DNA of 59,213 nucleotides, filler included, from Dugesia japonica (lineage: Eukaryota): the NCBI GenBank assembly GCA_001938525.1. It is 5 parts of 5 records of this genome, joined end to end, with 100 filler letters (N's around TTAATTAATTAA, not from the genome) between each part and the next. Parts side by side here need not be neighbours in the genome. Positions count along the whole stretch, not along the records: positions 24,944 to 35,266 come from MQRL01605079.1; 4 more parts are not named here. One strand, 5' to 3'. The translations under genes were made by a program, and so were the position numbers. Below, one piece after another: positions 2,391 through 35,266 of the stretch (positions within the stretch are counted from its first letter, which is position 1; each line of letters opens with the position of its first letter). The notes under the pieces were generated by a model, which saw nothing but the letters and a program-made list of their open reading frames with translations, was not told the DNA's origin and made no database searches.

Positions 2391-4480
2391 ACATCAATGA
2401 GAATAAGGAGGGCGGCAAAATCGGCAATACTCAATTTAAGTATAAGATAGAAAATAACTCATAAGTATACCTCCACAGCAATGATGATAATAATGTTAAG
2501 TAATAACTAGGTTTGAATAGTAATGATTTGAATACTAGAAATAATATTAGTAGAATTAGTAGTAGTAACAATATTTAACGGCATAGTTGCAATACCACTA
2601 ACATCAAGAACGATCTCGGGGATACTCCAAGATCAATAATTATTATGTTGCCGTTGAGATATATTTAAAATTCCACATTTCATATGAAATACACACCTAT
2701 TATGAATCGGACACCGATATTATTCAGAGGGAATCCGTCACACTACAACTCTGCCTAAATAAATAATATCTAACAATGAGCGTGTATAGCATAAATTCTC
2801 AGTGCCAGACTAGTAGCAGATGAGTGGAAATTATTTTACTCAATTATCGCAAATAACATTCTTTCCGATATTAATAGAATTATGAATTTTAAACACAATC
2901 TCGTCGTATTAATCATTTCAATAAAGGAAAAGTTGGTTCATGGACATTTTCTCAAGGGCTGGAATTGATGCGCTTATGGATTCACGATGTTTTGGGATCA
3001 TGCAAGCTATGGTGGGAGAAGAGTGAGTCAATTTGTTGGAAATTAAATAAAATTGGTTGTGATTTCTTGATTTTAATTTATTAGTTAATTCATTTTATGT
3101 TTTCTGTTTAATGTAAAATAGTTCATTTTTATGTCTGAATAACATTTATTATCAAATAATAGACACGACATTATAATATAAAATATACACCAAAATTTAC
3201 TTTTCTAATCAAAAACTTTTATCTGCAACGGGTAAATATTGGGAACCGATAATAGAATATTTTGGTAGATAATATACTCTTCATCTTTTTGTCTCACTGG
3301 AATGATCGGTTTTCTGTCCTACCAACACTATATCAGCGATGGTAAATTAACCGAGGGATTTTCTAAAGCAAATTGTTTAAGGTGAAAATGTTTTAGTCTC
3401 AAACTAACTGCTTAATAGTGGCTGTTTATAGTGGTAGTTTTTCTGAACTTGATTTAGTATTAATACGTAGTGGTGCTAATTTAGCTAAAGGCGCAACTTG
3501 TATTTTTTATTATTTTATTCTGCTAAAGTCAGGGGTCCTTTTATAGGATTTGCCTTACACCCCAACTTCTTCTAGATTTGCTGATTATTTTTGGATCAGT
3601 CTTTTCTGATTTCTATTGGTTTCAGCGCCAATTTTCTAAATTTTTCTCCACGTTTTGGTGCTGCAATTGGCGGCTATTTTTATCATGACACCTGAAAATT
3701 GTATCTTTGTTATATTTTTATTTTTAGGTATCTGATTGGTTCAATTTTGGAAACCCTACGGCACCCTTCTGGGTGATGGTAAGTTTTTCTTCCTGATAAT
3801 TCTTAATGACCCTTGTTTTTCTCTTCTGAAATTTTCTTGTGCCGTAGTTCTGTGATGTTCCGAAGCNAAGTTATTCGCATAAAACGAATTTCGACCTCGT
3901 TTTATTTCATTTTGAAATTAAATTAATTAATATTTCTCTTCTATTAATTGATTGTTTTTATTCTGATTTTCTTGGTTTTTATTATTATTTAGATAATTCT
4001 TCCTAATGCTGATACCTACATGGGTGACTTTGTAACACCGAGTTTGTTGAACCCGACTTCGATGGTATTTTTATTTTTTTTTACTGGTTATTTTCCGTTA
4101 CAAACTTCTCAAATATAATTGCTTCCTTCTTTGAATTCCATTATACGTGAGTTTATGGGTTTTACTGTTCATCTTTCCGGATTCCGAATTTTTTGGTCTT
4201 ATTAATTTTCTTCACAGGTGTTTCACCCCAAAAAATTTATCAATTTATTACTCAAGGTTAATAAATAATAAAAATTTTATTCAAGGTTATAAAATAATTT
4301 TCTTTTCTTAAATAAATTTCTTAAAATAGTCACGTACATTTTTATTTATTTTACATTATTTATTTTACTTCTAGAAAATTTCAAATTTCTAAATAAAGTA
4401 AATAGAAATGACCATTTCTAGTAAACGTTTTGTTTAATCAAGAAATCTGTTAAATTAATTGTAAAACAAAAATTTGGTTG

Positions 4481-24943: not shown

Positions 24944-27900
24944 CAAGAACCAATAAGTCTTGGAATATTTATAAAATCTGAATATCCAGAATTAATTCCA
25001 AGTAAATATTATTATTCTACAGGTGAAAATGTAGTTAATGAATTTATACAATTTCTTGATAATATTAATATTAAATTTGATAATATAGATAAAGACTACA
25101 TCGGAAAAATTCCAAAGTTTATTAAAAATTCAAATTGTTATTATTGTGAAAAACCAATCACAAAAGATGAAGTTTTTGATTATAATTATTACACACAAGA
25201 ACCTCGAGGTTATTCACATAAAGAATGTAAACAATCAAAAGAATATTTATTTATCCCATGTTATTTTCACAATGCAATGGGTTATGATAATCATTTATTC
25301 TTTAAACAACTTATATGTAATGATCCAGAAAATGTAAAAAATATAATTCCACATTCTGAAGATCAATATATCGCATTTAATTATGGAAATATTAGATTCT
25401 TAGATTCATTTAAAATATGTAAAACATCCGTCGAGAAAATGGGTGAAACATTAGCTAAATCCAATAATCATGAAATATTATCAACTTATAAATTAAAGCC
25501 AAAGAAAATCTTTTTCCCATATGACTATGTAAAAGCTAACAGTCCTAAAGAAATCATGGTATTATTAAAATCTTCTAGAATTCCAGAGAAACAAGATTTC
25601 TTTTCTAAATTAAGACAAAAAGGTATATCTGACCAAGAATATCAAGAATTTTTAAATGATTATAAAATACATGGAAATCTCTGGAATTACATGTTACATT
25701 ATATGAAACTAGATGTTTTAATCTTATCAGACTACGTAGAAAACTTTAGAGTAATATGCTTAGAATTCTATAAAATAGATCCATGTTATTGTTATACAGC
25801 ATCTGGTTTAACATGGCAAGCTGGAATGCGATTCACACAAATAAAACTTAAATTTGCAAAACCAGATACCTATGATCTATTCCTGAAATTTGAACGTGGA
25901 GTTAGAGGTGGTTATTCTGGTGAAGAAGGTGAACGTCAGGTCTTTGCATATAATAAATCACGAGATCCATCTAGACAATTAAATAAAGCTCAAAAAGAAG
26001 ATTTAAGAAATGTAATTTTAAATGGTAATCTTCAGGAATTAGATGAACCTCTTAATAATTTAATAAGACCTACTTATATTAAATATCTAGATGCAAATTC
26101 TTTATATGCAAGTTGTATGACAAAACCTCTTCCAACAGGTGAATTCTATAACTGTGAAAATCTAGAATATGAAACCTCAAATGAAGAAATGAATTATCTT
26201 TATGAAGTTGATCTAGATTATCCTAAAGAAATACATGATAAAACAAAATATTTCCCATTAGCACCAGAAAGTTTACTTGTTAGAACTGATATGTTAAGTA
26301 ATTATCAATTAAGTTTTAACAAGAAATTATCAAATAAAAATATTAAACTTACAATGAATCAATTAGATAAGAAAAATTATATCATCCTAGGTTCAACATT
26401 AGATCTATATCTACAACTTGGAATGTCTTTAAAAAAGATTCATACTAAATATAAAATACCAGTAAAACCATGGTTAAAAGAATATATAGATTTTAATATC
26501 GCACAAAGAACTTTAGCTAAAAAAAATAAAGATGAATTTGGTGTAAGTTTCTTTAAAGATATGAATAATTCATTCTATGGTAAAACCCTCGAAAATATTA
26601 GAAACCGTTGCAATGTTCAAATTGTAGGTACTGATGAAGCATTTCAAAATCTAGTATCTAAACCAACATATTTAAGTTCTAAAACTTTTAAAATAGAACC
26701 AGGAATTGTATCTAAAATAGCAGCAGTTCACATGACAAAAACAAAATTAAATTATAACAAATTTCCATATCTTGGTTTCACAATTCTAGAATATGCTAAA
26801 GAAGTAATGTATAATTTTGTATATAACCAGTTAGAACCTGCTGTCGGACAAGATTATAAAATTCACTATTCTGACAGTGTTACCCATGACACTCCAGTGA
26901 TCTTAAAAAAAAATAATAAAGTAATAATTAAATTGATCTCTGAGATCTCTCAAAATTATATAAAGAATCGCTATGATAATAAATATTATTCTTATCCTGA
27001 AAATTATAAAATTTGGACTACATTAGGTTGGACAAAATTACGCAAAGTAATTAAACATACAACTTCTAAAAAGATTTATAGAGTAAGAACACATCTTGGA
27101 ATTGTTGATGTAACAGAAGACCATTCATTATTAAATTTTAAATATGAACATATTAAACCAACAGAATTAACACTTAATACTAAATTATTACATAAAAAAA
27201 TATTTGAACCAAATAATAATGATTTTCCTACAACTAGACAAATATTTAAAGATAAAATATCTTTAGCTAAAGCTTATTATAAAGGTACATCTTTAGGAAT
27301 GAATTTAATTATTATACCATTAAAAAATAATTGTTTTAGTNNNNNNNNNNNNNNNNNNNNNNNNNNNNNNNNNNNNNNNNNNNNNNNNNNTATAAAGGTA
27401 CATCTTTAGGAATGAATTTAATTATTATACCATTAAAAAATAATTGTTTTAGTTTTTTACAATTTGATGAAGAAATCCCATATAACGTTCAATCTGTAAA
27501 ATTCTTAAGAGAAAATATAGAAGATGTATATGACATTGAAACCCAAGATGGAACATTCAACTGCGGATTTCCGTTGATAATAAAAAACACGGATTCCATA
27601 TTCGTAGAGATAACAGGAGATAACAACCTTAAAATTCTAAATTCATTAACTGGTGATAATCTATTCCAAATGAAAGATGAATTACCAAATTCTGAAATTT
27701 TAAAATGTGTATTTATAAAACCTAAATCTTATGCATATGAATATGAATCTAACAATAAAATCTCTTTTCAGAAGAAACATAAAGGTGTTCAAAGTTACAA
27801 TCCTATTAGAATGAAAGAATTTGAATCAATATTAGAAGATTCAAAGAAAATAATCTACGGAACAAATTACTCTTTAAAATCAGAACTACATGTAATTCAA

Positions 27901-28068
27901 TTAACAGAACAAAAGAAAATAGCATTAACAGCCTTCAGTGACAAAAGAATTATCGAAGACAACGGAACAAGAACATGGCCACATGGAAATCAATATAAAT
28001 GTGAAAAATGTCAAGACTGGCATTTAAGATTAGATAAGATAAATCGTAATTTAAAATGTTTGACTTAA
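24944..28068 (+). CDS. polB: Protein-primed family B DNA polymerase with intein; 5' end beyond the contig edge
   Basis: Frame open from 24944; FHNAMGYD, FLDS, FFPYDY, YMKLDV, GVRGG, YLDANSLY, KDMNNSFYGK, YSD|intein|TDS, KPKSY, KHKG, DKR. The gap at 27341-27390 is flanked by a 63-bp exact duplication; collapsing it joins the two ORFs in frame. Confidence 0.95.
26876..27588 (+). other. Mini-intein (200 aa after gap collapse) in pPolB motif C
   Basis: Block A SVTHDTPV, block B VTEDHSLL (TxxH), block F VYDIET, block G IIKN followed by +1 Thr (TDS). Confidence 0.93.
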
Positions 28069-28630
28069 AATGTTAGATTTAAAATGTTAATGTAAATGTT
28101 TGATTTAAATGTTTGACTTAAATGTTTGACTTAAAATGTTTGACTTAAAATGTTAATGTAAATGTTAGATTTAAATTGTTTGACTTAAAATGTTAGATTT
28201 AAAATGTTTGACTTAAAATGTTAGATTTAAAATGTTTGACTTAAAATGTTAGATTTAAATGTTTGATTTAAAATGTTTGACTTAAAATGTTTGATTTAAA
28301 ATGTTAGATTTAAAATGTTTGATTTAAATGTTAGATTTAAAATGTTAGATTTAAATTGTTTGACTTAAAATGTTTGACTTAAAATGTTAGATTTAAAATG
28401 TTAGACTTAAAATGTTTGATTTAAAATGTTAGATTTAAAATGTTTGACTTAAAATGTTTGATTTAAATGTTTGATTTAAAATGTTTGATTTAAATGTTTG
28501 ATTTAAATGTTTGATTTAAAATGTTTGATTTAAATGTTTGACTTAAATGTTTGATTTAAAATGTTTGATTTAAAATGTTTGACTTAAATGTTAGATTTAA
28601 AATGTTTGATTTAAATGTTTGACTTAATGT
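28052..28630. repeat. Tandem array of 13-14-bp units AAATGTTWGAYTTA(A), about 40 copies
   Basis: Direct inspection; starts within the last polB codons. Confidence 0.95.
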
Positions 28631-28643
28631 AAATTACTAAATA

Positions 28644-29354
28644 ATGATATTAGAAAATAGCGATAGCCACATAATGTCAGAAGCAACAGAAGAAGAATTA
28701 ATTAAAATTATAAATTCTAAAAAATGTAAATCTGTAAAAATAAACGGTAAAAATTATTATATTTCTAAAAAAGTTAAAGATGAAGCTGTAAAGAAACATA
28801 ACGAAGGTGGATTTGCATTCTTAGCCGCCATTCCAGCAGTAATTGCAGCATTAGCAACATCAACTGGAATAGCATCTGGTATTGCAAAAACAGTTTCAGA
28901 TTCTAGAGATGCTATTAATAAACAAAAACAAGGTGAATTAATTGATATACAAAAACAAGTTGAAGCTAAAAAACTATCCGAGAACAAACTAACTACAACT
29001 GTAGAAAGTGGTCCAACAGGATCTGGAATTAAAAACCAAAACCATAAAGGAAGACATAAAGTAAGTAAGAAAGGACAGGGTATTTATCTAAATCCTTATC
29101 AAGGTTCAGCAATACATAAATATTTAAAAAATATTGATCCTAAATTTAAAAATTTAACTAAAAAATTTAAATCCGGAACTCGCATAATTAAACATGGCCA
29201 TGGTATATATTTAAATCCTTATAATACACAACCACAAGGGCAACAAGGAAAAGGTATTAATTATGAAACCGAAGATGAAACTGAAACTGAAACTGAAACT
29301 GAAGATGAAAACCCCATAAAGGAAGAAACTGAAACTGAAACCGATGAATATTAA
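28644..29354 (+). CDS. Adenovirus pX-like core/membrane-active precursor
   Basis: EGGFAFLAAIPAVIAALA hydrophobic segment, repeated GxG|IYLNPY, basic middle, acidic (ET)n tail. Confidence 0.65.
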   Translation: MILENSDSHIMSEATEEELIKIINSKKCKSVKINGKNYYISKKVKDEAVKKHNEGGFAFLAAIPAVIAALATSTGIASGIAKTVSDSRDAINKQKQGELIDIQKQVEAKKLSENKLTTTVESGPTGSGIKNQNHKGRHKVSKKGQGIYLNPYQGSAIHKYLKNIDPKFKNLTKKFKSGTRIIKHGHGIYLNPYNTQPQGQQGKGINYETEDETETETETEDENPIKEETETETDEY

Positions 29355-29399
29355 AATTAAATCTTTATAAAAGAGCTGCGCGAAGACATAAAGGAGATA

Positions 29400-30819
29400 A
29401 TGGATGCAAAACAAATGGATGAAAAAATTAAAGAATTAAGAGCTCAAATTGCTGCTCAAGAGAAATATAATAACTTTTTTTGTACTAAAGTTCAAGATTA
29501 TAATACTTTACAAACTAACTTATCCACTTTACAATTACCAACTATCACCGCAATTGAAAAACTTGCAACTAAACCAGAAATAATACAAACGGGTGATTTA
29601 ACAAAATTTTTATCAAATGAAAAAATCTCACCATTTATTCCAGAATACTCCATTGAAAATATTAATCCCCTTGGAAAATTAACTCAAACAATTATCCCTA
29701 GATTTGCTAAAATAGATATTGTAGCAAATGATAAAATTAAAAGTTTTCTGGAAATAACTTTAAAAGAAAATAAAATTTATTTATTCTCCGAGGATAATAA
29801 ACCAAATTTCTTATTTAAATCTGAAATTATACCATACTCCGATGGAATATTTAGGATGATCCTCGGAAATACTGATTATAAAGAAGCACCTAATGAAATT
29901 GAGTCTTATTTAAAATTAATATCCCCTTTACTAACTAATTCTGATTATGTTAATAATTTAAAATCAAAATTTAGAAAAGTAGAACTACCCAAACCTAAAA
30001 GAAAAGCTATTCCAGCTGAAAAAACAGAAAGATCCATAGAGGACGGAAAAATATCTAAACTAGAACCAGAATCTGAACCAGATTATAATAAAACTGATTA
30101 TGAAACTGATGAAGAAAAACCATTACATAAAAAACATGAAATATTTATGAAAGATAATATACATCCAATTTTAGAAATTAATTCTTTTAATTTAACAACA
30201 GAATTAACAAAATTAACAACACCAAAAATTTATTATACAACTGTTAATAATAAAAATTTCGTGACATTAAAATTTCCTAATAATGATAAAGAGATATTTT
30301 TTTATAAAAGGAATGATACTAGTTATGTTACAGAAGATATAAAAACCCATTCATATAATAATATTTTAATAGATATAATTTCAGGAAATAAAGAAAAAAT
30401 AAAAACAATGACCACAGAAATGAAAAAAAAATATATTCCAATATATCTAGATTTAGTAAAACCAACTAAAGATGATTCATATTGTAATTATTTAAAGAAA
30501 ACGGGTGGAAAGATAAAACAACATAAAAATAAGAACCCAATTGCATTATTTGAAAAGTTAACATTATTAATTTCAGCTGTAAAATCTGGACATAATAATC
30601 TCTCATCTGANNNNNNNNNNNNNNNNNNNNNNNNNNNNNNNNNNNNNNNNNNNNNNNNNNATTGCATTATTTGAAAAGTTAACATTATTAATTTCAGCTG
30701 TAAAATCTGGACATAATAATCTCTCATCTGAAATAAAATCTATATGTAAACAATTAAAATCTAAAGGTTTATTATCCGATATTATTTATAAAATGTATAA
30801 GTCTAAATATTTCAATTAA
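29400..30819 (+). CDS. Polinton PZ-like protein
   Basis: The gap at 30611-30660 is flanked by a 71-bp duplication; the collapsed frame ends NPIALFEKLTLLISAVKSGHNNLSSEIKSICKQLKSKGLL...SKYFN*. Confidence 0.8.
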
Positions 30820-30960
30820 ATCCGCGTTTTACATGCTACATTTCACACTAAATATTTCAATTAAATATTTCACATGTCACATTTTACACTAAATATTTCA
30901 ATTAAATATTTCACACTAAATATTTCACACTAAATATTTCACACTAAATATTTCAACTAA
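30800..30960. repeat. Tandem 14-bp repeat (actaaatatttcac)
   Basis: Direct inspection. Confidence 0.85.
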
Positions 30961-30968
30961 TAAATAGC

Positions 30969-31730
30969 ATGTCTCATCAATTCTTAATAGTTGGTAAAGA
31001 ACAAGATTTAAAAATTAATCTAGATTATCCGATAAAACTAGATTCGGAATATGAACTTGGATTGTTATATTTTTCATGTTACAATATTATTTTTAACATC
31101 ACCAATTTAAATAATAAATTCACAACCGCTGAAGGAAAATATATCAAACCCATAAAACAAGAAAAACAACAACAACAAAAACAACCAACACAACCACAAC
31201 AAGAATATGAAGTTATAAAACAAGGAGAAAAATCCCTAGAACCAGGATCATATGAAATAAAAGAAATGTCAAATCGTTTAGAGAAATATCTAGAAATTAC
31301 ACCTGACACTGCAACATCTAAATGTAACATTAAAATTAAAATCACATTAGAATTTGATTCTAAGTCATTCTTACATACATTACTAGGATTTAAACCTGGA
31401 AAATACGAACCTGGAGATTATTATTCTTCTGATAAAATTGACATTTCAAATATTAACGCGATAAATGTAACATGTAACATTGTCAAGGGTAATTATTTAA
31501 CCAATGAAAGAAAGACAGAAAAAATTAATTTATTATATTCATTTCCAATTAACACAGTTGCATTTGGATATAAAATTCTAGAACGACCATCACCAGCTAT
31601 TTATTCTAAAATTAACACAGATTACATTGACGGTTTTAAATTAAACATCATAGATGAAAACTTTAACACCATCGACTTTAACCAAGAAACAATTACAATT
31701 TTAGTTCATCTTCGTAAATATCGACTTTAA
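30969..31730 (+). CDS. Penton / minor capsid protein (PX, single jelly-roll)
   Basis: PIKL..YELGL, PGSYEI, INVTCNIVKG, GYKILERP, IDENFNTIDFNQETITILVHLR. Confidence 0.9.
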   Translation: MSHQFLIVGKEQDLKINLDYPIKLDSEYELGLLYFSCYNIIFNITNLNNKFTTAEGKYIKPIKQEKQQQQKQPTQPQQEYEVIKQGEKSLEPGSYEIKEMSNRLEKYLEITPDTATSKCNIKIKITLEFDSKSFLHTLLGFKPGKYEPGDYYSSDKIDISNINAINVTCNIVKGNYLTNERKTEKINLLYSFPINTVAFGYKILERPSPAIYSKINTDYIDGFKLNIIDENFNTIDFNQETITILVHLRKYRL

Positions 31731-31852
31731 CCAGTAGCATGTTAAATATCGCTTGTGACATGTTACATAGAAAATATTGATTATAACCAGTAACATTTTA
31801 ATATTTTAAATATTGATTATAACCAGTAGCATTCAATATTTAAGTTTAAGAA

Positions 31853-32305
31853 ATGTACAATTTATTAGATTTTCTAAAAACATTTGGAATCAACACAACA
31901 ACAAATTTTGATTTATATTCAATCTCTGAATTTTTAAATCTACCATTAGAGATTTACATGAAAAATGAGATCGCTTCGCTGGCCTCCGGACAAATCGCTA
32001 CACTTAACCCGAAAACATGTTACATTTTTAATTATCAAAATTCAAATCAAAATGGTACACATTGGGTTGCTTACAATAAAGGATATTATTTTGATTCTTT
32101 TGGTTTAAAACCTTTAGATCAACTTGAAAATTTTACAAAGAAATATAATAAAATTCAAGTGCAACATTTTGGAACTGAAATATGTGGTATTTTATGTATT
32201 TATTTTTTATATTCGCTGAAAAAACATGTTAAATTCGACATGATAATATCTGAAATGTTAGATCTTTATAATTCAATATTAAAAAATAGCACGAATAATG
32301 AATAA
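31853..32305 (+). CDS. Adenain-like cysteine maturation protease
   Basis: GTHWVA (His), YFDSFG (Asp), QVQ...ICG (Gln/Cys) all intact. Confidence 0.92.
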   Translation: MYNLLDFLKTFGINTTTNFDLYSISEFLNLPLEIYMKNEIASLASGQIATLNPKTCYIFNYQNSNQNGTHWVAYNKGYYFDSFGLKPLDQLENFTKKYNKIQVQHFGTEICGILCIYFLYSLKKHVKFDMIISEMLDLYNSILKNSTNNE

Positions 32306-34072
32306 GTTTGGTGCTACAGTTGCTGGCAATTCAACAGAAATATTGAAAAATGTTGATGCAAAAATTAGAACTTTAGATGCAACAAATGAAAATAAATATG
32401 TAAATGAAACAGGTGACATGATTACATTTCTAAAAATAACAGATGATCCTAAGGATCTTCAAGATGCAGTTAATCTAAAATATATTAAGTCTCTTGAAGA
32501 AGTTAATCTAAAATATATTAAGTTTCTTGAAGATAAATTAGAAAGACATGAAATAATTTTCAATAGATTATTAAAAGTTGATAGTTTTACAGCTAACAAA
32601 TTATATTTAGAATCTAAAATCAATGAATTAAAAACATTGAACATCGATATTTCCGGATTGAATAATAAAATTCAGAGATTAACAAAATCTTGTAATCAAG
32701 AAACATTTGACAAAATCTACACTGAAATTAGAAGATTAAGACAAGAATTATTTCCATTTAAAAGAAGTGATCTATTGATTATTTTAGAAAAATTAGATTC
32801 TCTTGATTCATCTAAAATTAAAAAAGAAATTAACATCTTAAATATTAGAATTAACAAATTACATGAAGATATAAACAAGAAAACATATGACATTTATATA
32901 ATTTCCATTGACAATCTTAAAATTTATATAGAAAAATTTAAACCTATAATTTTAAAATTAACTTCTGATATAAAAAAAGTAAATCCACGACAACATAAAA
33001 TATATTCTGATAAAATTAATCTTTCATTTAAAAAATATAAAGAAACANNNNNNNNNNNNNNNNNNNNNNNNNNNNNNNNNNNNNNNNNNNNNNNNNNNNN
33101 NNNNNNNNNNNNNNNNNNNNNNNNNNNNNNNNNNNNNNNNNNNNNNNNNNNNNNNNNNNNNNNNNNNNNNNNNNNNNNNNNNNNNNNNNNNNNNNNNNNN
33201 NNNNNNNNNNNNNNNNNNNNNNNNNNNNNNNNNCTGGAATGTTTAGTTTTAATCAACCTTTAGAAATCCATTTATATACAAAAGTAAATGAAAAAATTAG
33301 TATAAATGTTACTGGAAAATGTGTCGCAAAATTTACATATGTCATTAGAATTAATAAAATTGCAGTGTCATTTTCATATGTAAAACCAAAAACTCAAAGT
33401 GATTCAATTAATGATTTTAATATTTATCGTGAAAGTACTGATATTACTAATGTTACTAATATAAATTATATTGTAATAATTTTACCTGAAAATATTTATC
33501 TGACAGAAATAAGTGTTAATTCATATAAATTAGAAACACTTGAAAAATTAAAAGAAGAATATGAAAAGATAAAATCTAATCTTCACATATCACACATTAA
33601 AAGAATTGATACTTTAATGAAAACTTATGATGAGTTATCACTTAAAAGTATAAAAGAAATAATTGATAATTACTTACCATTTATTAGTAATGGAGGTGTT
33701 AATACAAATTTTTTATTTATTTGGACAAGTATTGAGAAAGATCTTCTTTGTTATTATATTACTGAAAAAGTGGAAAGAATAGATTTCAAAAGAAAAATTA
33801 AAAAGGTGACACTAGAAANNNNNNNNNNNNNNNNNNNNNNNNNNNNNNNNNNNNNNNNNNNNNNNNNNNNNNNNNNNNNNNNNNNTATTCTAAAATGTTA
33901 TTCTAGCAAAAGTTTTAAATATTACATTAAATATAATAATAATGAAATAAAAGAATATATTGGGAATCCTAATCATGAATTATTTACAATAGCATATCTA
34001 AATAAAAATGCAAGTTTTATAGAATTAACTTTACCAAAAGGAATTTATATTAAATCTATTTTATTAGAATAA
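32298..34072 (+). CDS. Fibre/spike-like protein, probably one ORF across N gaps
   Basis: PxxxxDAVNxKY fibre-type motif, long coiled coil, beta-rich C-terminus; continuity across the 33048-33233 gap is inferred. Confidence 0.55.
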
Positions 34073-34075
34073 GAA

Positions 34076-34684
34076 ATGGATCCTGATAATACAAATATTT
34101 ATCCTAGTTTGCGTGAAAGTAGTGATAATTATACAATCTTAGATTTAAAAAATAAACTTGCTTTATCTAGAATTAAAGATTTTGATAATGATCTTTATTA
34201 TATTAAAGATAAAATTAAACATTATAAGAAACTAGAGAAAAGATGGAATAGAATTGATACTGGTATTAAATATACACAGATATTATTAAGTGCTGGAATT
34301 GGCATAGCAGGAATAATATTTATAACTCCAGTTGGAGTAGCTATTACTACGATAGGAATACCGGTTATAACAGGGGCTATTTCAGTTCTGCCTGTAATTG
34401 GAACAATGAACACTTCATTTGTTAAATCTAGGAAGGAAAGATATTCAAAATTAATATCTAAACTTGAATGTGTTAAAAATAAATTATTCTTATTTCAACA
34501 GAAAGCAGTTAATGATGAGATTTTAACAGACGATGAACTAATGATCTCGAAAAAGATGGTATCTGATGTTCACGATCTGATCTCAGGACATAAACATGAT
34601 AAAACTGATAATAATAATATAAAACTGTTACTTGAAAATCAAAATAAAGTTATTTCAGAAATGCGTAGTAAACTTGGAATTTAA
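34076..34684 (+). CDS. Conserved Polinton membrane protein with a central hydrophobic hairpin
   Basis: IYPSL N-terminus, Gly-rich hydrophobic region, homologues in contigs 1 and 2. Confidence 0.8.
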   Translation: MDPDNTNIYPSLRESSDNYTILDLKNKLALSRIKDFDNDLYYIKDKIKHYKKLEKRWNRIDTGIKYTQILLSAGIGIAGIIFITPVGVAITTIGIPVITGAISVLPVIGTMNTSFVKSRKERYSKLISKLECVKNKLFLFQQKAVNDEILTDDELMISKKMVSDVHDLISGHKHDKTDNNNIKLLLENQNKVISEMRSKLGI

Positions 34685-34869
34685 TTGCATGTTGTACTCG
34701 TTAGTTTGAATGTAACATGTTGCATGTTGCATGTTGCATGTTAATTTTAACCGTGACGAAAAACCAAAACCATAAAGGAAGACATAAAGGACGAAAAAAA
34801 CCACAAGGGCGAAAAAAACTAAAAAAAATGTTCAAAAGTTATATCTACGATTAAAAATTTTATCCTAAA

Positions 34870-35172
34870 ATGGAGAAGATTACAGAAGAAATTGGAATAT
34901 TAATATCTCATCAACTTTTTAAAGAAACTGATATTATTGAAGAATTTCGCGATAAGCCTGTAGATATTTTAGCATGGGAATGGTTAAATAAATGCCATAA
35001 AGGAAGAAAATCTCGTCAGGAACAAGATAAAACTATTCCATTTAGAAAAGGATCTGAAATTTATCATTATATAATTAGAGAAAGACCTAGGAAAATTACA
35101 AGAGATAAATTAGAACAGAAACGTGTTTTATATGAAATTGAACGTGAAAAAAGACAGAAAGAACCATATTAG
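34870..35172 (+). CDS. Hypothetical basic protein
   Basis: 100-aa ATG ORF co-oriented with the module. Confidence 0.5.
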   Translation: MEKITEEIGILISHQLFKETDIIEEFRDKPVDILAWEWLNKCHKGRKSRQEQDKTIPFRKGSEIYHYIIRERPRKITRDKLEQKRVLYEIEREKRQKEPY

Positions 35173-35266
35173 ACCAACGACCCAGAGGGACCCATATTTA
35201 GAATAAATCATCTAAAAGTTCATCAGTTTCCTTGTTAAGATAAAAATAATTATATTTAGTTTTCCA

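What the first reader, a model, noticed from the sequence alone, without database searches (positions are those of the whole stretch)
26876..27588. Mini-intein in the catalytic motif C of a Polinton protein-primed DNA polymerase in an animal assembly
Seen: YSDTDS is split as YSD|SVTHDTPV...VTEDHSLL...VYDIETQDGTFNCGFPLIIKN|TDS. It has Ser1, block B TxxH, block F Asp, terminal Asn and +1 Thr. The insert is 200 aa after collapsing the gap duplication, with no LAGLIDADG motif. Established: this is the pol-c intein site of archaeal and giant-virus PolBs, and inteins are essentially unknown from animal nuclear genes. From memory, the Mimivirus PolB intein also starts SVTxDTP, has VTEDHSLL and ends KN rather than HN. 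Inference: an intein crossed from an NCLDV-type RNA-primed PolB into a protein-primed PolB of an integrating virus, so replication of this element depends on protein splicing. I know of no description of this, but cannot verify novelty.
Basis: partly seen in the sequence, partly recalled or inferred. Interest (0 to 1): 0.93.

Follow-up and report, generated by a model that had tools for sequence, protein, structure and literature searches.

The report
Giant-virus-type intein splitting a Polinton-like polymerase
A self-splicing protein insert (intein) of a family otherwise found in giant-virus genes sits exactly inside the catalytic YxDTDS motif of the protein-primed DNA polymerase of a small Polinton-like virus element. 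This is a rare and apparently undescribed host for such an insert, but nothing here shows that the contig belongs to an animal.

Summary
The pPolB reading frame runs YSD | SVTHDTP… then …IIKN | TDS, with the junctions at 26875/26876 and 27588/27589.

- **Precise insertion:** in an intein-free homologue (L002) the two exteins abut with no gap or overlap.
- **Intein family:** the insert is 38-51% identical (E down to 4e-22) to inteins at the same YGD|TDS site of giant-virus family-B polymerases, and to giant-virus topoisomerase II inteins. It keeps nearly all family-invariant residues: Ser1, TxxH, block F Asp, terminal Asn and +1 Thr.
- **Fold:** a model of the left piece matches solved inteins.
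- **Assembly gap:** the two frames do not connect as written. An exact 63-nt overlap, read in the same codon phase on both sides, points to an unmerged contig overlap. I built no joined sequence.
- **Host gene and element:** the host gene is pPolB (PF03175). A penton-like protein and an adenovirus-type protease lie downstream. No integrase, major capsid protein or host flank was found in the piece.
- **Rarity:** none of the 120 closest pPolBs has an intein, but three other pPolB-like fragments in public data carry one at this site.
- **Unresolved:** animal origin, integration and actual splicing are untested, and the donor gene (PolB or topo II) is unresolved.

Verdict: a real feature, and a new member of a known kind.

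The parts
24944..28068 (+). [quoted passage not shown] Its N-terminus is cut off by the piece's edge, and it contains the intein and one assembly gap. There are no stops or frameshifts in the sequenced parts.
   Evidence: The frame is open from the edge. PF03175 DNA_pol_B_2 scores 1.2e-16. 599 pPolB homologues were found at 31-47% identity. The Exo II, Exo III, A, B and KxY motifs are readable.
24944..26875 (+). N-extein, ending ...KIHYSD (the first half of motif C).
   Evidence: It aligns to L002 up to nucleotide 3382, immediately followed by the C-extein match at 3383.
26876..27340 (+). Intein, left piece (155 aa): Ser1, block A, and block B with T80-x-x-H83.
   Evidence: Homology. It matches 32 of 34 family-conserved columns. 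The AF2 model has pLDDT 84.6 and matches NeqN, TFIIB, RadA and PolB inteins in the PDB.
27341..27390 (.). Assembly gap (50 N) inside the intein.
   Evidence: It is flanked by an exact 63-nt overlap.
27278..27340 (+). Left copy of the 63-nt duplication that flanks the gap.
   Evidence: 100% identical to 27391-27453 and read in the same codon phase.
27391..27453 (+). Right copy of the 63-nt duplication that flanks the gap.
27391..27588 (+). Intein, right piece (66 aa): block F (VYD..T) and block G ending KN.
   Evidence: It aligns to the very C-terminal end of the relatives' inteins. It matches 9 of 10 conserved columns, including the terminal Asn.
27589..28068 (+). C-extein, beginning TDSIFVE (the second half of motif C, +1 Thr), with the KxY motif and the stop codon.
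   Evidence: It is 34% identical to the C-terminus of the intein-free P0059, contiguous with the N-extein match.
30969..31730 (+). Penton-like minor capsid protein.
   Evidence: 47 homologues were found. One lies in a Polinton-like locus with an A32-type ATPase, an rve integrase and a pPolB (L003). The AF2 model (pLDDT 70) matches minor capsid or penton proteins of Catovirus, TVS1, MELD virus, Mavirus and adomavirus LO5.
31853..32305 (+). Adenovirus-type cysteine protease.
   Evidence: PF00770 Peptidase_C5 scores 8.1e-5, 22.8 bits, above the 21.3-bit cut-off. There is weak similarity to a gene in L003.

Best explanation
The insert is a genuine class-1 intein of about 200 residues without a homing endonuclease. 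It belongs to a large intein family that lives mainly in giant-virus (Nucleocytoviricota) replication genes. It is inserted precisely between the Asp and the Thr of motif C (Y-S-D | T-D-S) of the protein-primed DNA polymerase of a Polinton-like virus element.

Because the two catalytic aspartates of motif C lie on different exteins, the precursor should be inactive as a polymerase. Activity should appear only after protein splicing. By the established intein mechanism, Ser1 makes the N-O acyl shift, helped by the block B Thr/His. The +1 Thr then attacks, the terminal Asn cyclises to release the intein, and the YSDTDS peptide is formed.

The intein was most probably acquired horizontally from the giant-virus gene pool. 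The route would be the short DNA target that the shared YxDTDS coding constraint creates in otherwise unrelated polymerases. Having lost any endonuclease, or never having had one, it now persists because only a precise deletion could remove it.

Shown here: the precise insertion, the homology, the conserved splice residues, the fold of the N-lobe and the identity of the host gene. Inferred: splicing competence, the direction of transfer, and continuity across the gap.
For: - **Precise insertion:** the N- and C-extein matches in the intein-free homologue L002 meet at adjacent nucleotides in one frame. All 120 closest pPolBs that reach motif C have it unsplit.
- **Homology:** the left piece is 38-51% identical (E 4e-22 and weaker) to proteins with PF14890/PF14528 domains. 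In 49 of these 57 proteins my pattern found both junctions, and all 49 are YGD|S...N|TDS. The left piece aligns from their residue 1, and the right piece aligns to their last residue.
- **Conserved residues:** S1, T80, H83, block F Asp and the terminal Asn are shared with 49 of 49 relatives. Overall 41 of 44 strongly conserved columns are kept.
- **KN ending:** this is the family norm, 34 of 49.
- **Solved structures:** a PDB sequence search gives the Nanoarchaeum PolB split intein N-part at E 0.0097 with the single sequence and 1.2e-6 with a family profile, plus TFIIB inteins.
- **Fold:** the 25 best PDB matches of the model are all inteins. NeqN is best, with TM 0.79 on the target and rmsd 2.2 A.
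- **Named viral matches:** Megavirus, Pithovirus, Marseillevirus, Klosneuvirus and HaV PolB, and an iridovirus topo II.
- **Giant-virus context of relatives:**
- **Composition:** the intein's GC3 (10-18%) equals that of its host gene (13-19%), so it is not a recent chimera.
- **Independent junctions:** each extein-intein junction lies in uninterrupted sequence, on opposite sides of the gap.
- **Other pPolB hosts:** P0310 and P0258 have exteins that hit 119 of 120 pPolBs and 0 of 201 classical PolB/topo II proteins.
- **Shared DNA target:** the 18-nt site is 9-15/18 identical to intein-bearing giant-virus PolB sites.
Against: - Pfam's own intein models do not reach E<=1 on either piece of the window's intein. 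Membership rests on homology to family members that do pass the models and on the fold.
- The penultimate residue is Lys, not the usual His, although that is the family rule.
- The gap sits inside the intein, so continuity, total length and the absence of an endonuclease are inferred rather than read.
- Splicing itself is untested.
- The window's intein does not group with the other pPolB inteins, and its donor gene is unresolved.
Confidence: 0.8

Rival explanations
1. The element is not part of an animal genome. It would be a free or protist-associated Polinton-like virus, possibly one that replicates alongside a giant virus, or a contaminant scaffold in whatever assembly it came from. The intein would still be real, but the 'first animal intein' reading would fail.
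For: - The piece is a 10.3-kb scaffold at about 24% GC. It starts inside the polymerase gene and shows no host flank, integrase or terminal repeat.
- Its two closest pPolBs (47% and 38% identity) sit on a 2.7-kb contig and on a 3.9-kb metagenome contig of 25% GC. Named animal pPolBs are only 31-33% identical.
- Relatives of the intein live in giant viruses of protists, so the transfer needs a shared cell.
- A published census found no inteins in metazoan genomes (PMC5784728).
Against: - Hundreds of pPolB homologues lie on megabase contigs, and two of them are named as animal proteins, from Actinostola and Leptopilina.
- One other pPolB-intein fragment comes from an NCBI genome assembly with millions of contigs (L005).
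- I could not identify the source organism of the window or of L001 and L005.
Confidence: 0.5
2. The insert is a decayed intein relic that no longer splices, so this pPolB copy is dead.
For: - No endonuclease was detected.
- There is no Pfam hit on the pieces.
- The penultimate residue is Lys.
- One related copy (L006) is interrupted by several frame changes, on a contig of 2x coverage.
Against: - 41 of 44 family-conserved columns are kept, including every residue of the splicing chemistry.
- Both frames are open in a sequence where the off-frames have a stop about every ten codons.
- The polymerase motifs Exo II, Exo III, A, B and KxY are all intact.
- Lys is the normal penultimate residue of this family.
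Confidence: 0.1
3. It is an assembly chimera: a giant-virus intein stitched into a pPolB scaffold through the shared motif.
For: - There is a gap inside the intein.
- Motif C coding sequences of the two polymerase classes are similar, 9-15 of 18 nt.
Against: - Each junction lies within uninterrupted sequence, on separate contigs either side of the gap. Two independent in-frame misjoins exactly at D|S and N|T would be needed.
- The composition of the intein equals that of the host gene.
- The same architecture is seen in independent data sets (L005, L006).
Confidence: 0.03

Closest known systems
pol-c allele inteins of giant-virus family-B DNA polymerases (Mimivirus PolB intein, Ogata et al. 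2005, PMC549080; Megavirus, Klosneuvirus, HaV-01 and GVMAG PolBs returned by the searches)
   Same: - Same insertion point, YxD|TDS in motif C.
- Same N-terminal SVTxDTP-type start, the same TEDHSL block B, and the same VYD block F.
- Same Lys-Asn ending and +1 Thr.
- 38-51% identity.
- Many family members are in the same 200-260 aa size class.
   Different: The host here is a protein-primed polymerase (PF03175), not the RNA-primed delta-like PolB (PF00136/PF03104). The host element is a small Polinton-like virus rather than a giant virus. No LAGLIDADG domain was detected.
Giant-virus topoisomerase IIA inteins at the Toprim DxD motif (for example P0260, which is Pfam-confirmed)
   Same: They belong to the same intein family. 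They are the window intein's nearest neighbours over the N-terminal 86 columns, with up to 60% identity, and are nearest in 57% of column resamplings. They too split an acidic metal-binding motif after an Asp.
   Different: The host protein and the insertion site differ. P0260 carries a weak, sub-threshold LAGLIDADG match.
Nanoarchaeum equitans PolB split intein (NeqN/NeqC; PDB 5OXX, 5OXZ, 5OXW) and archaeal PolB pol-c inteins
   Same: It is the best solved-structure match by both sequence and fold, and it is also an intein of a family-B polymerase.
   Different: The Neq intein is naturally split and archaeal. Identity is only about 22%. I did not check its insertion site here.
HNH and VSR nuclease domains inserted in Polinton pPolB2 (Jeong et al. 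2023, PMC10748475). Krupovic et al. 2024 (PMC11161782) interpreted these as possible traces of intein invasions.
   Same: These are also mobile-element-derived insertions in Polinton pPolBs. Most of the listed pPolB relatives (84 of 120) carry a precomputed PF02945 (Endonuclease_7) hit.
   Different: Those are nuclease domains without a Hint splicing domain, at other positions. Here the situation is reversed: a complete Hint-type splicing domain with no nuclease, in motif C.

Membership tests
Intein (Hint-fold protein-splicing element, class 1) | In-frame insertion whose flanks are contiguous in intein-free homologues | tested here: met
   The N- and C-extein matches in L002 abut at 3382|3383 in one frame. 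Motif C is unsplit in all close pPolBs that reach it.
Intein (Hint-fold protein-splicing element, class 1) | Nucleophile (Ser/Cys) at residue 1 and block B TxxH | tested here: met
   S1, T80 and H83 are each shared with 49 of 49 relatives.
Intein (Hint-fold protein-splicing element, class 1) | Block F Asp, C-terminal Asn, and +1 Ser/Thr/Cys | tested here: met
   VYD..T and the terminal N are conserved in 49 of 49. The +1 residue is Thr, from TDS.
Intein (Hint-fold protein-splicing element, class 1) | Penultimate His (common, not universal) | tested here: not met
   The residue is Lys here, and Lys in 34 of 49 relatives.
Intein (Hint-fold protein-splicing element, class 1) | Match to curated intein or Hint profile HMMs | tested here: not met
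   No Pfam family reaches E<=1 on either piece. Family members do pass PF14890 (P0260 40.5 bits and P0234 42.4 bits against a 35.8-bit cut-off).
Intein (Hint-fold protein-splicing element, class 1) | Hint fold | tested here: inconclusive
   Only the left 155 aa were modelled (pLDDT 84.6). The top 25 PDB matches are all inteins. The C-lobe was not modelled because the pieces were not joined.
Intein (Hint-fold protein-splicing element, class 1) | Protein splicing actually occurs | not testable with these tools
   No expression or proteomic data are available.
pol-c allele of family-B polymerase inteins | Insertion between D and T of YxDTDS (motif C) | tested here: met
   The window has YSD|TDS. 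Relatives have YGD|TDS. The site is defined in PMC549080.
pol-c allele of family-B polymerase inteins | Closer in sequence to pol-c inteins than to inteins at other sites | tested here: inconclusive
   The nearest neighbour is a topo II intein in 57% of resamplings, a pol-c intein in 27%, and another pPolB intein in 4%.
Mini-intein (no homing endonuclease) | No endonuclease domain between blocks B and F | tested here: inconclusive
   There is no LAGLIDADG or HNH Pfam hit. The model shows only a loop, one helix and short strands after block B. However, an assembly gap lies in this region.
Polinton/Maverick (Polintoviricetes-like element) | Protein-primed PolB | tested here: met
   PF03175 scores 1.2e-16. 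There are 599 homologues, many on megabase contigs.
Polinton/Maverick (Polintoviricetes-like element) | Adenovirus-type (Ulp1-like) cysteine protease | tested here: met
   PF00770 scores 8.1e-5, above its cut-off.
Polinton/Maverick (Polintoviricetes-like element) | Minor (penton) and major double-jelly-roll capsid proteins | tested here: inconclusive
   The penton-like fold is supported for ORF 30969-31730. No major capsid protein was identified among the remaining ORFs, and two of those are cut by gaps.
Polinton/Maverick (Polintoviricetes-like element) | rve-family integrase and FtsK/A32 packaging ATPase | tested here: inconclusive
   Neither is present in the 10.3 kb held, but the element is cut at both ends. 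Both are present in the related locus L003.
Polinton/Maverick (Polintoviricetes-like element) | Terminal inverted repeats, target-site duplication, host flanks | not testable with these tools
   The piece begins inside the polymerase gene and ends without any recognisable terminus.

The most novel reading that the evidence does not exclude
The scaffold is a resident Polinton/Maverick of an animal genome. That would make this the first bona fide intein carried in a metazoan genome. Its giant-virus ancestry would then record a past co-infection of one cell by a giant virus and a Polinton-like virus. It would also give direct support to the published suggestion that pPolBs have been invaded by inteins.
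Probability: 0.2. Interest if true: 0.8.

Novelty: new member of a known kind. Interest (0 to 1): 0.55.

Why it matters
Inteins at the pol-c site of RNA-primed family-B polymerases are textbook cases. I found no description of a complete splicing domain in a protein-primed polymerase of a Polinton-like virus in the papers I could search. The 2018 census of eukaryotic inteins lists only delta-like viral polymerases, never mentions transposons, and states that inteins are absent from metazoan genomes (PMC5784728). Krupovic et al. 2024 only infer 'intein invasions' of pPolB from nuclease domains.

This case shows three things. First, the six-residue catalytic motif shared by two very distant polymerase classes is enough of a common target for an intein family to cross between them. 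Second, it ties Polinton-like elements ecologically to giant viruses. Third, it marks a replication enzyme whose activity should depend on protein splicing.

Novelty is limited in two ways. I recall, but could not check, that Kapitonov and Jurka 2006 may mention an intein in a Polinton polymerase; that paper is not held. In addition, the animal context is unproven.

Tried and rejected
- **Pfam on the intein pieces:** no hit on either piece or on the C-extein.
- **PDB search with the N-extein alone:** nothing found.
- **Exact look-ups of two window ORFs:** not on record, so the source assembly stays unknown.
- **Close-relative scan of IMG/VR with the junction:** none found.
- **Junction-alignment scans of JGI metagenomes and IMG/VR:** these returned 27 loci. 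All have the intein in classical PolB or other genes, and none in a pPolB.
- **Accession numbers of related contigs:** not found in any paper.
- **Kapitonov and Jurka 2006:** not held.
- **NJ tree of 182 intein N-parts:** too short (86 columns) to resolve the origin. It shows only that the window intein does not sit with the other three pPolB inteins.
- **Chimera and dead-relic readings:** considered and rejected; see the rival explanations.
- **Steps I did not take:** I did not collapse the duplication, join the two frames, or excise the intein to model the mature polymerase.
Full report
**1. What is in the sequence**

The usable piece is 24944-35266. It is about 24% GC and has four internal N runs. 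One reading frame is open from the piece's left edge to 27340, and a second is open from 27391 to the stop at 28066-28068.

The first frame reads pPolB motifs in order:
- an Exo II-like FHNAMGYDNHLF,
- an Exo III-like YMKLD,
- motif A, DANSLYA,
- motif B, KDMNNSFYGK,
- then ...KIHYSD, followed directly by SVTHDTPVILKK....

The second frame ends the insert with ...GFPLIIKN. It continues TDSIFVE... and contains a KxY motif (KPKSYAY). There are no stops or frameshifts in the sequenced parts of the gene. The N-terminus is missing only because the contig starts there.

**2. The gap (tested first)**

As written, the frames on the two sides do not connect, because 50 N is not a multiple of three. However, 27278-27340 and 27391-27453 are identical (63 nt). 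Each ORF reads them in the same codon phase, giving the same 21 residues.

The other 50-N gap in the piece (30611-30660) is flanked by a 71-nt exact overlap. The 186-N and 67-N gaps are not flanked this way. This pattern fits contig ends that overlap but were scaffolded with a placeholder gap.

If so, nothing is missing and the intein is 155 + 66 - 21 = 200 residues. This is arithmetic only. I built no merged sequence, and relatives cannot settle the length because their middle regions range from 152 to 634 aa. Extra sequence hidden in the gap cannot be excluded without reads.

**3. It is an intein**

Pfam's intein models do not reach E<=1 on either piece, so I tested homology directly.

*Sequence homology.* The 155-aa left piece finds 57 proteins at E 4e-22 to 3e-7 with 33-55% identity. 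Almost all are classical family-B polymerases (PF00136/PF03104), many with precomputed PF14890 (Intein_splicing) and PF14528 (LAGLIDADG) domains.

In 49 of the 57 my pattern found both junctions, and in all 49 the matching segment lies between YGD and TDS. The window's left piece aligns from their residue 1, and the right piece aligns to their last residue.

*Conserved residues.* At columns where the relatives are at least 80% invariant, the window agrees at 32 of 34 N-part positions and 9 of 10 C-part positions. S1, T80, E81, D82, H83, the block F Asp and the terminal Asn each agree with 49 of 49 relatives. The Lys-Asn ending is the family norm, at 34 of 49.

*Solved structures.* A PDB sequence search puts the Nanoarchaeum PolB split intein N-part first. 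It scores E 0.0097 in register with the single sequence, and 1.2e-6 with a family profile that also finds TFIIB inteins.

*Fold.* An AlphaFold2 model of the left piece alone (pLDDT 84.6) matches inteins in all of its top 25 PDB hits: NeqN, the Pho PolII, TFIIB, RadA, Aes123 PolB1 and PolB16 inteins, and others.

*Family membership in Pfam.* Family members pass Pfam's intein model above its cut-off.

**4. The insertion is precise and lies in motif C of a pPolB**

The N-extein matches PF03175 (1.2e-16) and no other polymerase family. It has 599 homologues at E<=1e-3, of which the best 120 are 31-47% identical.

Among those 120, none has a split motif C. Every one that reaches the motif reads xxDTDx unsplit, as DTDS in all but five, which read DTDC.

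In the intein-free homologue P0059 (L002), the N-extein match ends at nucleotide 3382. The C-extein match begins at 3383 in the same frame. The insert therefore has exact boundaries.

The position, YxD|TDS, is the one that Ogata et al. describe as the pol-c allele for Mimivirus PolB (YGD/TDS; PMC549080). That the two aspartates of this motif bind the catalytic metals is established knowledge for family-B polymerases. The inactivity of the unspliced precursor is my inference from that.

**5. Where the intein family lives**

An exhaustive HMMER search used the last 100 extein residues plus the left intein piece. It gave 2365 hits at E<=1e-3 and 895 at E<=1e-10.

Junction census over the inteins extracted from the listed hits:

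| Host site | Inteins counted |
|---|---|
| YGD\|S, classical PolB pol-c | 136 |
| DQD, DSD or DAD\|S, Toprim motif of topoisomerase IIA | 24 |
| SAN\|S, PolB motif B | 5 |
| Other sites | a few |

The topo IIA assignment was Pfam-confirmed for P0260.

Contexts are typical of giant viruses:
- ankyrin and F-box neighbours for P0002;
- a dense mix of eukaryote-like genes around P0260;
- IMG/VR contigs named GVMAG;
- named structural matches to Megavirus, Klosneuvirus, Pithovirus, Marseillevirus, Pandoravirus and HaV-01 PolBs and to an iridovirus topo II.

Mimivirus itself did not come back by name.

**6. Other pPolB hosts**

Three hits have pPolB-like exteins with an intein at the same site:

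| Protein | Locus and source | Junction |
|---|---|---|
| P0310 | L005, a 710-bp contig of NCBI assembly GCA_044232415.1 | YFD\|S |
| P0258 | L006, an 8.2-kb ENA metagenome contig | YMD\|S |
| P0290 | L007, an ENA metagenome contig | YTD\|S |

.

The extein parts of P0310 and P0258 hit 119 of 120 pPolBs at E<=1e-3 and 0 of 201 classical PolB or topo II proteins. P0310 is 71% identical over 69 residues to the intein-free P0062, whose motif C is intact. P0290 has too little extein for a firm call.

The L006 copy is interrupted by several frame changes. It comes from a contig of 2x coverage, so sequencing error and decay cannot be told apart.

The window is therefore not a singleton, but pPolB hosts are rare. 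Scans of JGI metagenomes and IMG/VR with a junction alignment found 27 more loci, none of them pPolB.

**7. Origin of the window's intein**

Over 86 N-terminal columns, the three other pPolB inteins cluster together, but the window's intein does not join them.

Its nearest neighbour across 1000 column resamplings was a topo II intein in 569, a pol-c PolB intein in 271, and another pPolB intein in 43. The alignment is short, so I treat the donor gene as unresolved within the giant-virus pool.

Repeated independent invasions of pPolB are possible but not shown.

The 18-nt target in the window (TATTCTGAC/ACGGATTCC) is 9-15/18 identical to intein-bearing giant-virus PolB sites, and 14/18 identical to the empty pPolB site in L002. 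The coding constraint of the motif thus provides a common DNA target.

The intein's composition matches its host gene (GC3 10-18% against 13-19%). It is therefore either old in this lineage or came from an equally AT-rich donor.

**8. The element**

Two recognisable genes lie downstream of the polymerase.
- **ORF 30969-31730:** it has 47 homologues. One lies in a locus with an A32-type ATPase, an rve integrase and a pPolB. Its model matches minor capsid or penton proteins of giant viruses, TVS1, MELD virus, Mavirus and adomaviruses.
- **ORF 31853-32305:** an adenovirus-type protease.

No integrase, packaging ATPase, major capsid protein, terminal repeat or host flank is present in the 10.3 kb, and both ends are cut. 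'Polinton-like virus element' is supported; 'integrating' and 'animal' are not testable here.

The closest pPolBs come from unidentified sources. The two listed homologues that carry animal names (Actinostola, Leptopilina) are 31-33% identical.

**9. Literature**

In the searchable library I found no report of a Hint-type intein in a pPolB.

- Jeong et al. 2023 describe HNH and VSR nuclease domains in pPolB2 and never use the word intein.
- Krupovic et al. 2024 suggest that such insertions reflect intein invasions.
- Green et al. 2018 list viral polymerase inteins only in delta-like PolBs and state that inteins are absent from metazoan genomes.

From memory only, Kapitonov and Jurka 2006 may mention an intein in a Polinton polymerase. 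That paper is not held, so novelty is probable, not certain.

**10. Verdict**

The feature is real and correctly read. Mechanistically it is an ordinary class-1 intein of a known giant-virus family, sitting in an unusual host gene and host element. The animal claim is unproven. Interest is moderate to high for intein and Polinton specialists.

Noticed in passing
window 30540-30731 (gap 30611-30660): The second 50-N gap, inside ORF 29400-30674, is flanked by an exact 71-nt overlap. This is the same unmerged-overlap signature as the gap in the intein. The 186-N and 67-N gaps have no such overlap.
   Followed up: partly
L001:1986-2690 (GCA_043755215.1, JAYUTI010000412.1): The contig holding the closest pPolB relative (48% identity) continues into an FtsH-like AAA protease gene. 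That gene appears to carry its own intein-like insert right after the Walker A GPPGTGK (it reads ...GTGK then CITGDSLIL...). The contig also starts with an inverted partial copy of the pPolB segment.
   Followed up: no
P0260 (L035:10001-14680), P0232, P0234, P0243-P0245 and others: The same intein family occupies at least three sites in giant-virus genes: PolB motif C, PolB motif B (SAN|S) and the Toprim DxD of topoisomerase IIA. The top hits of the exhaustive search carry two or three matching stretches in one protein.
   Followed up: partly
window about 25136-25228: A Cys/His-rich stretch (CxxC ... HxxC) sits in the pPolB just upstream of the Exo II motif. The 38%-identical relative P0059 has weak zinc-finger Pfam hits (zf-C2H2_jaz, zf-met).
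   Followed up: no
window 28644-29354: This ORF has a hydrophobic, probably membrane-spanning segment, a duplicated G(Q/H)GIYLNPY motif and an acidic (Thr-Glu)n tail. It has no family match and its function is unknown.
   Followed up: no
L003:8748-11068: The Polinton-like locus in a 349-kb ENA contig carries two tandem paralogues of the penton-like gene. Its pPolB has an intact YGDTDS, the same six residues as the giant-virus target site.
   Followed up: no
pPolB relatives P0060-P0177: Most of the pPolB relatives carry a precomputed PF02945 (Endonuclease_7) hit and some carry PF07498 (Rho_N). This fits the published nuclease-domain insertions in Polinton pPolBs. The window's N-extein gave no such hit.
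   Followed up: no
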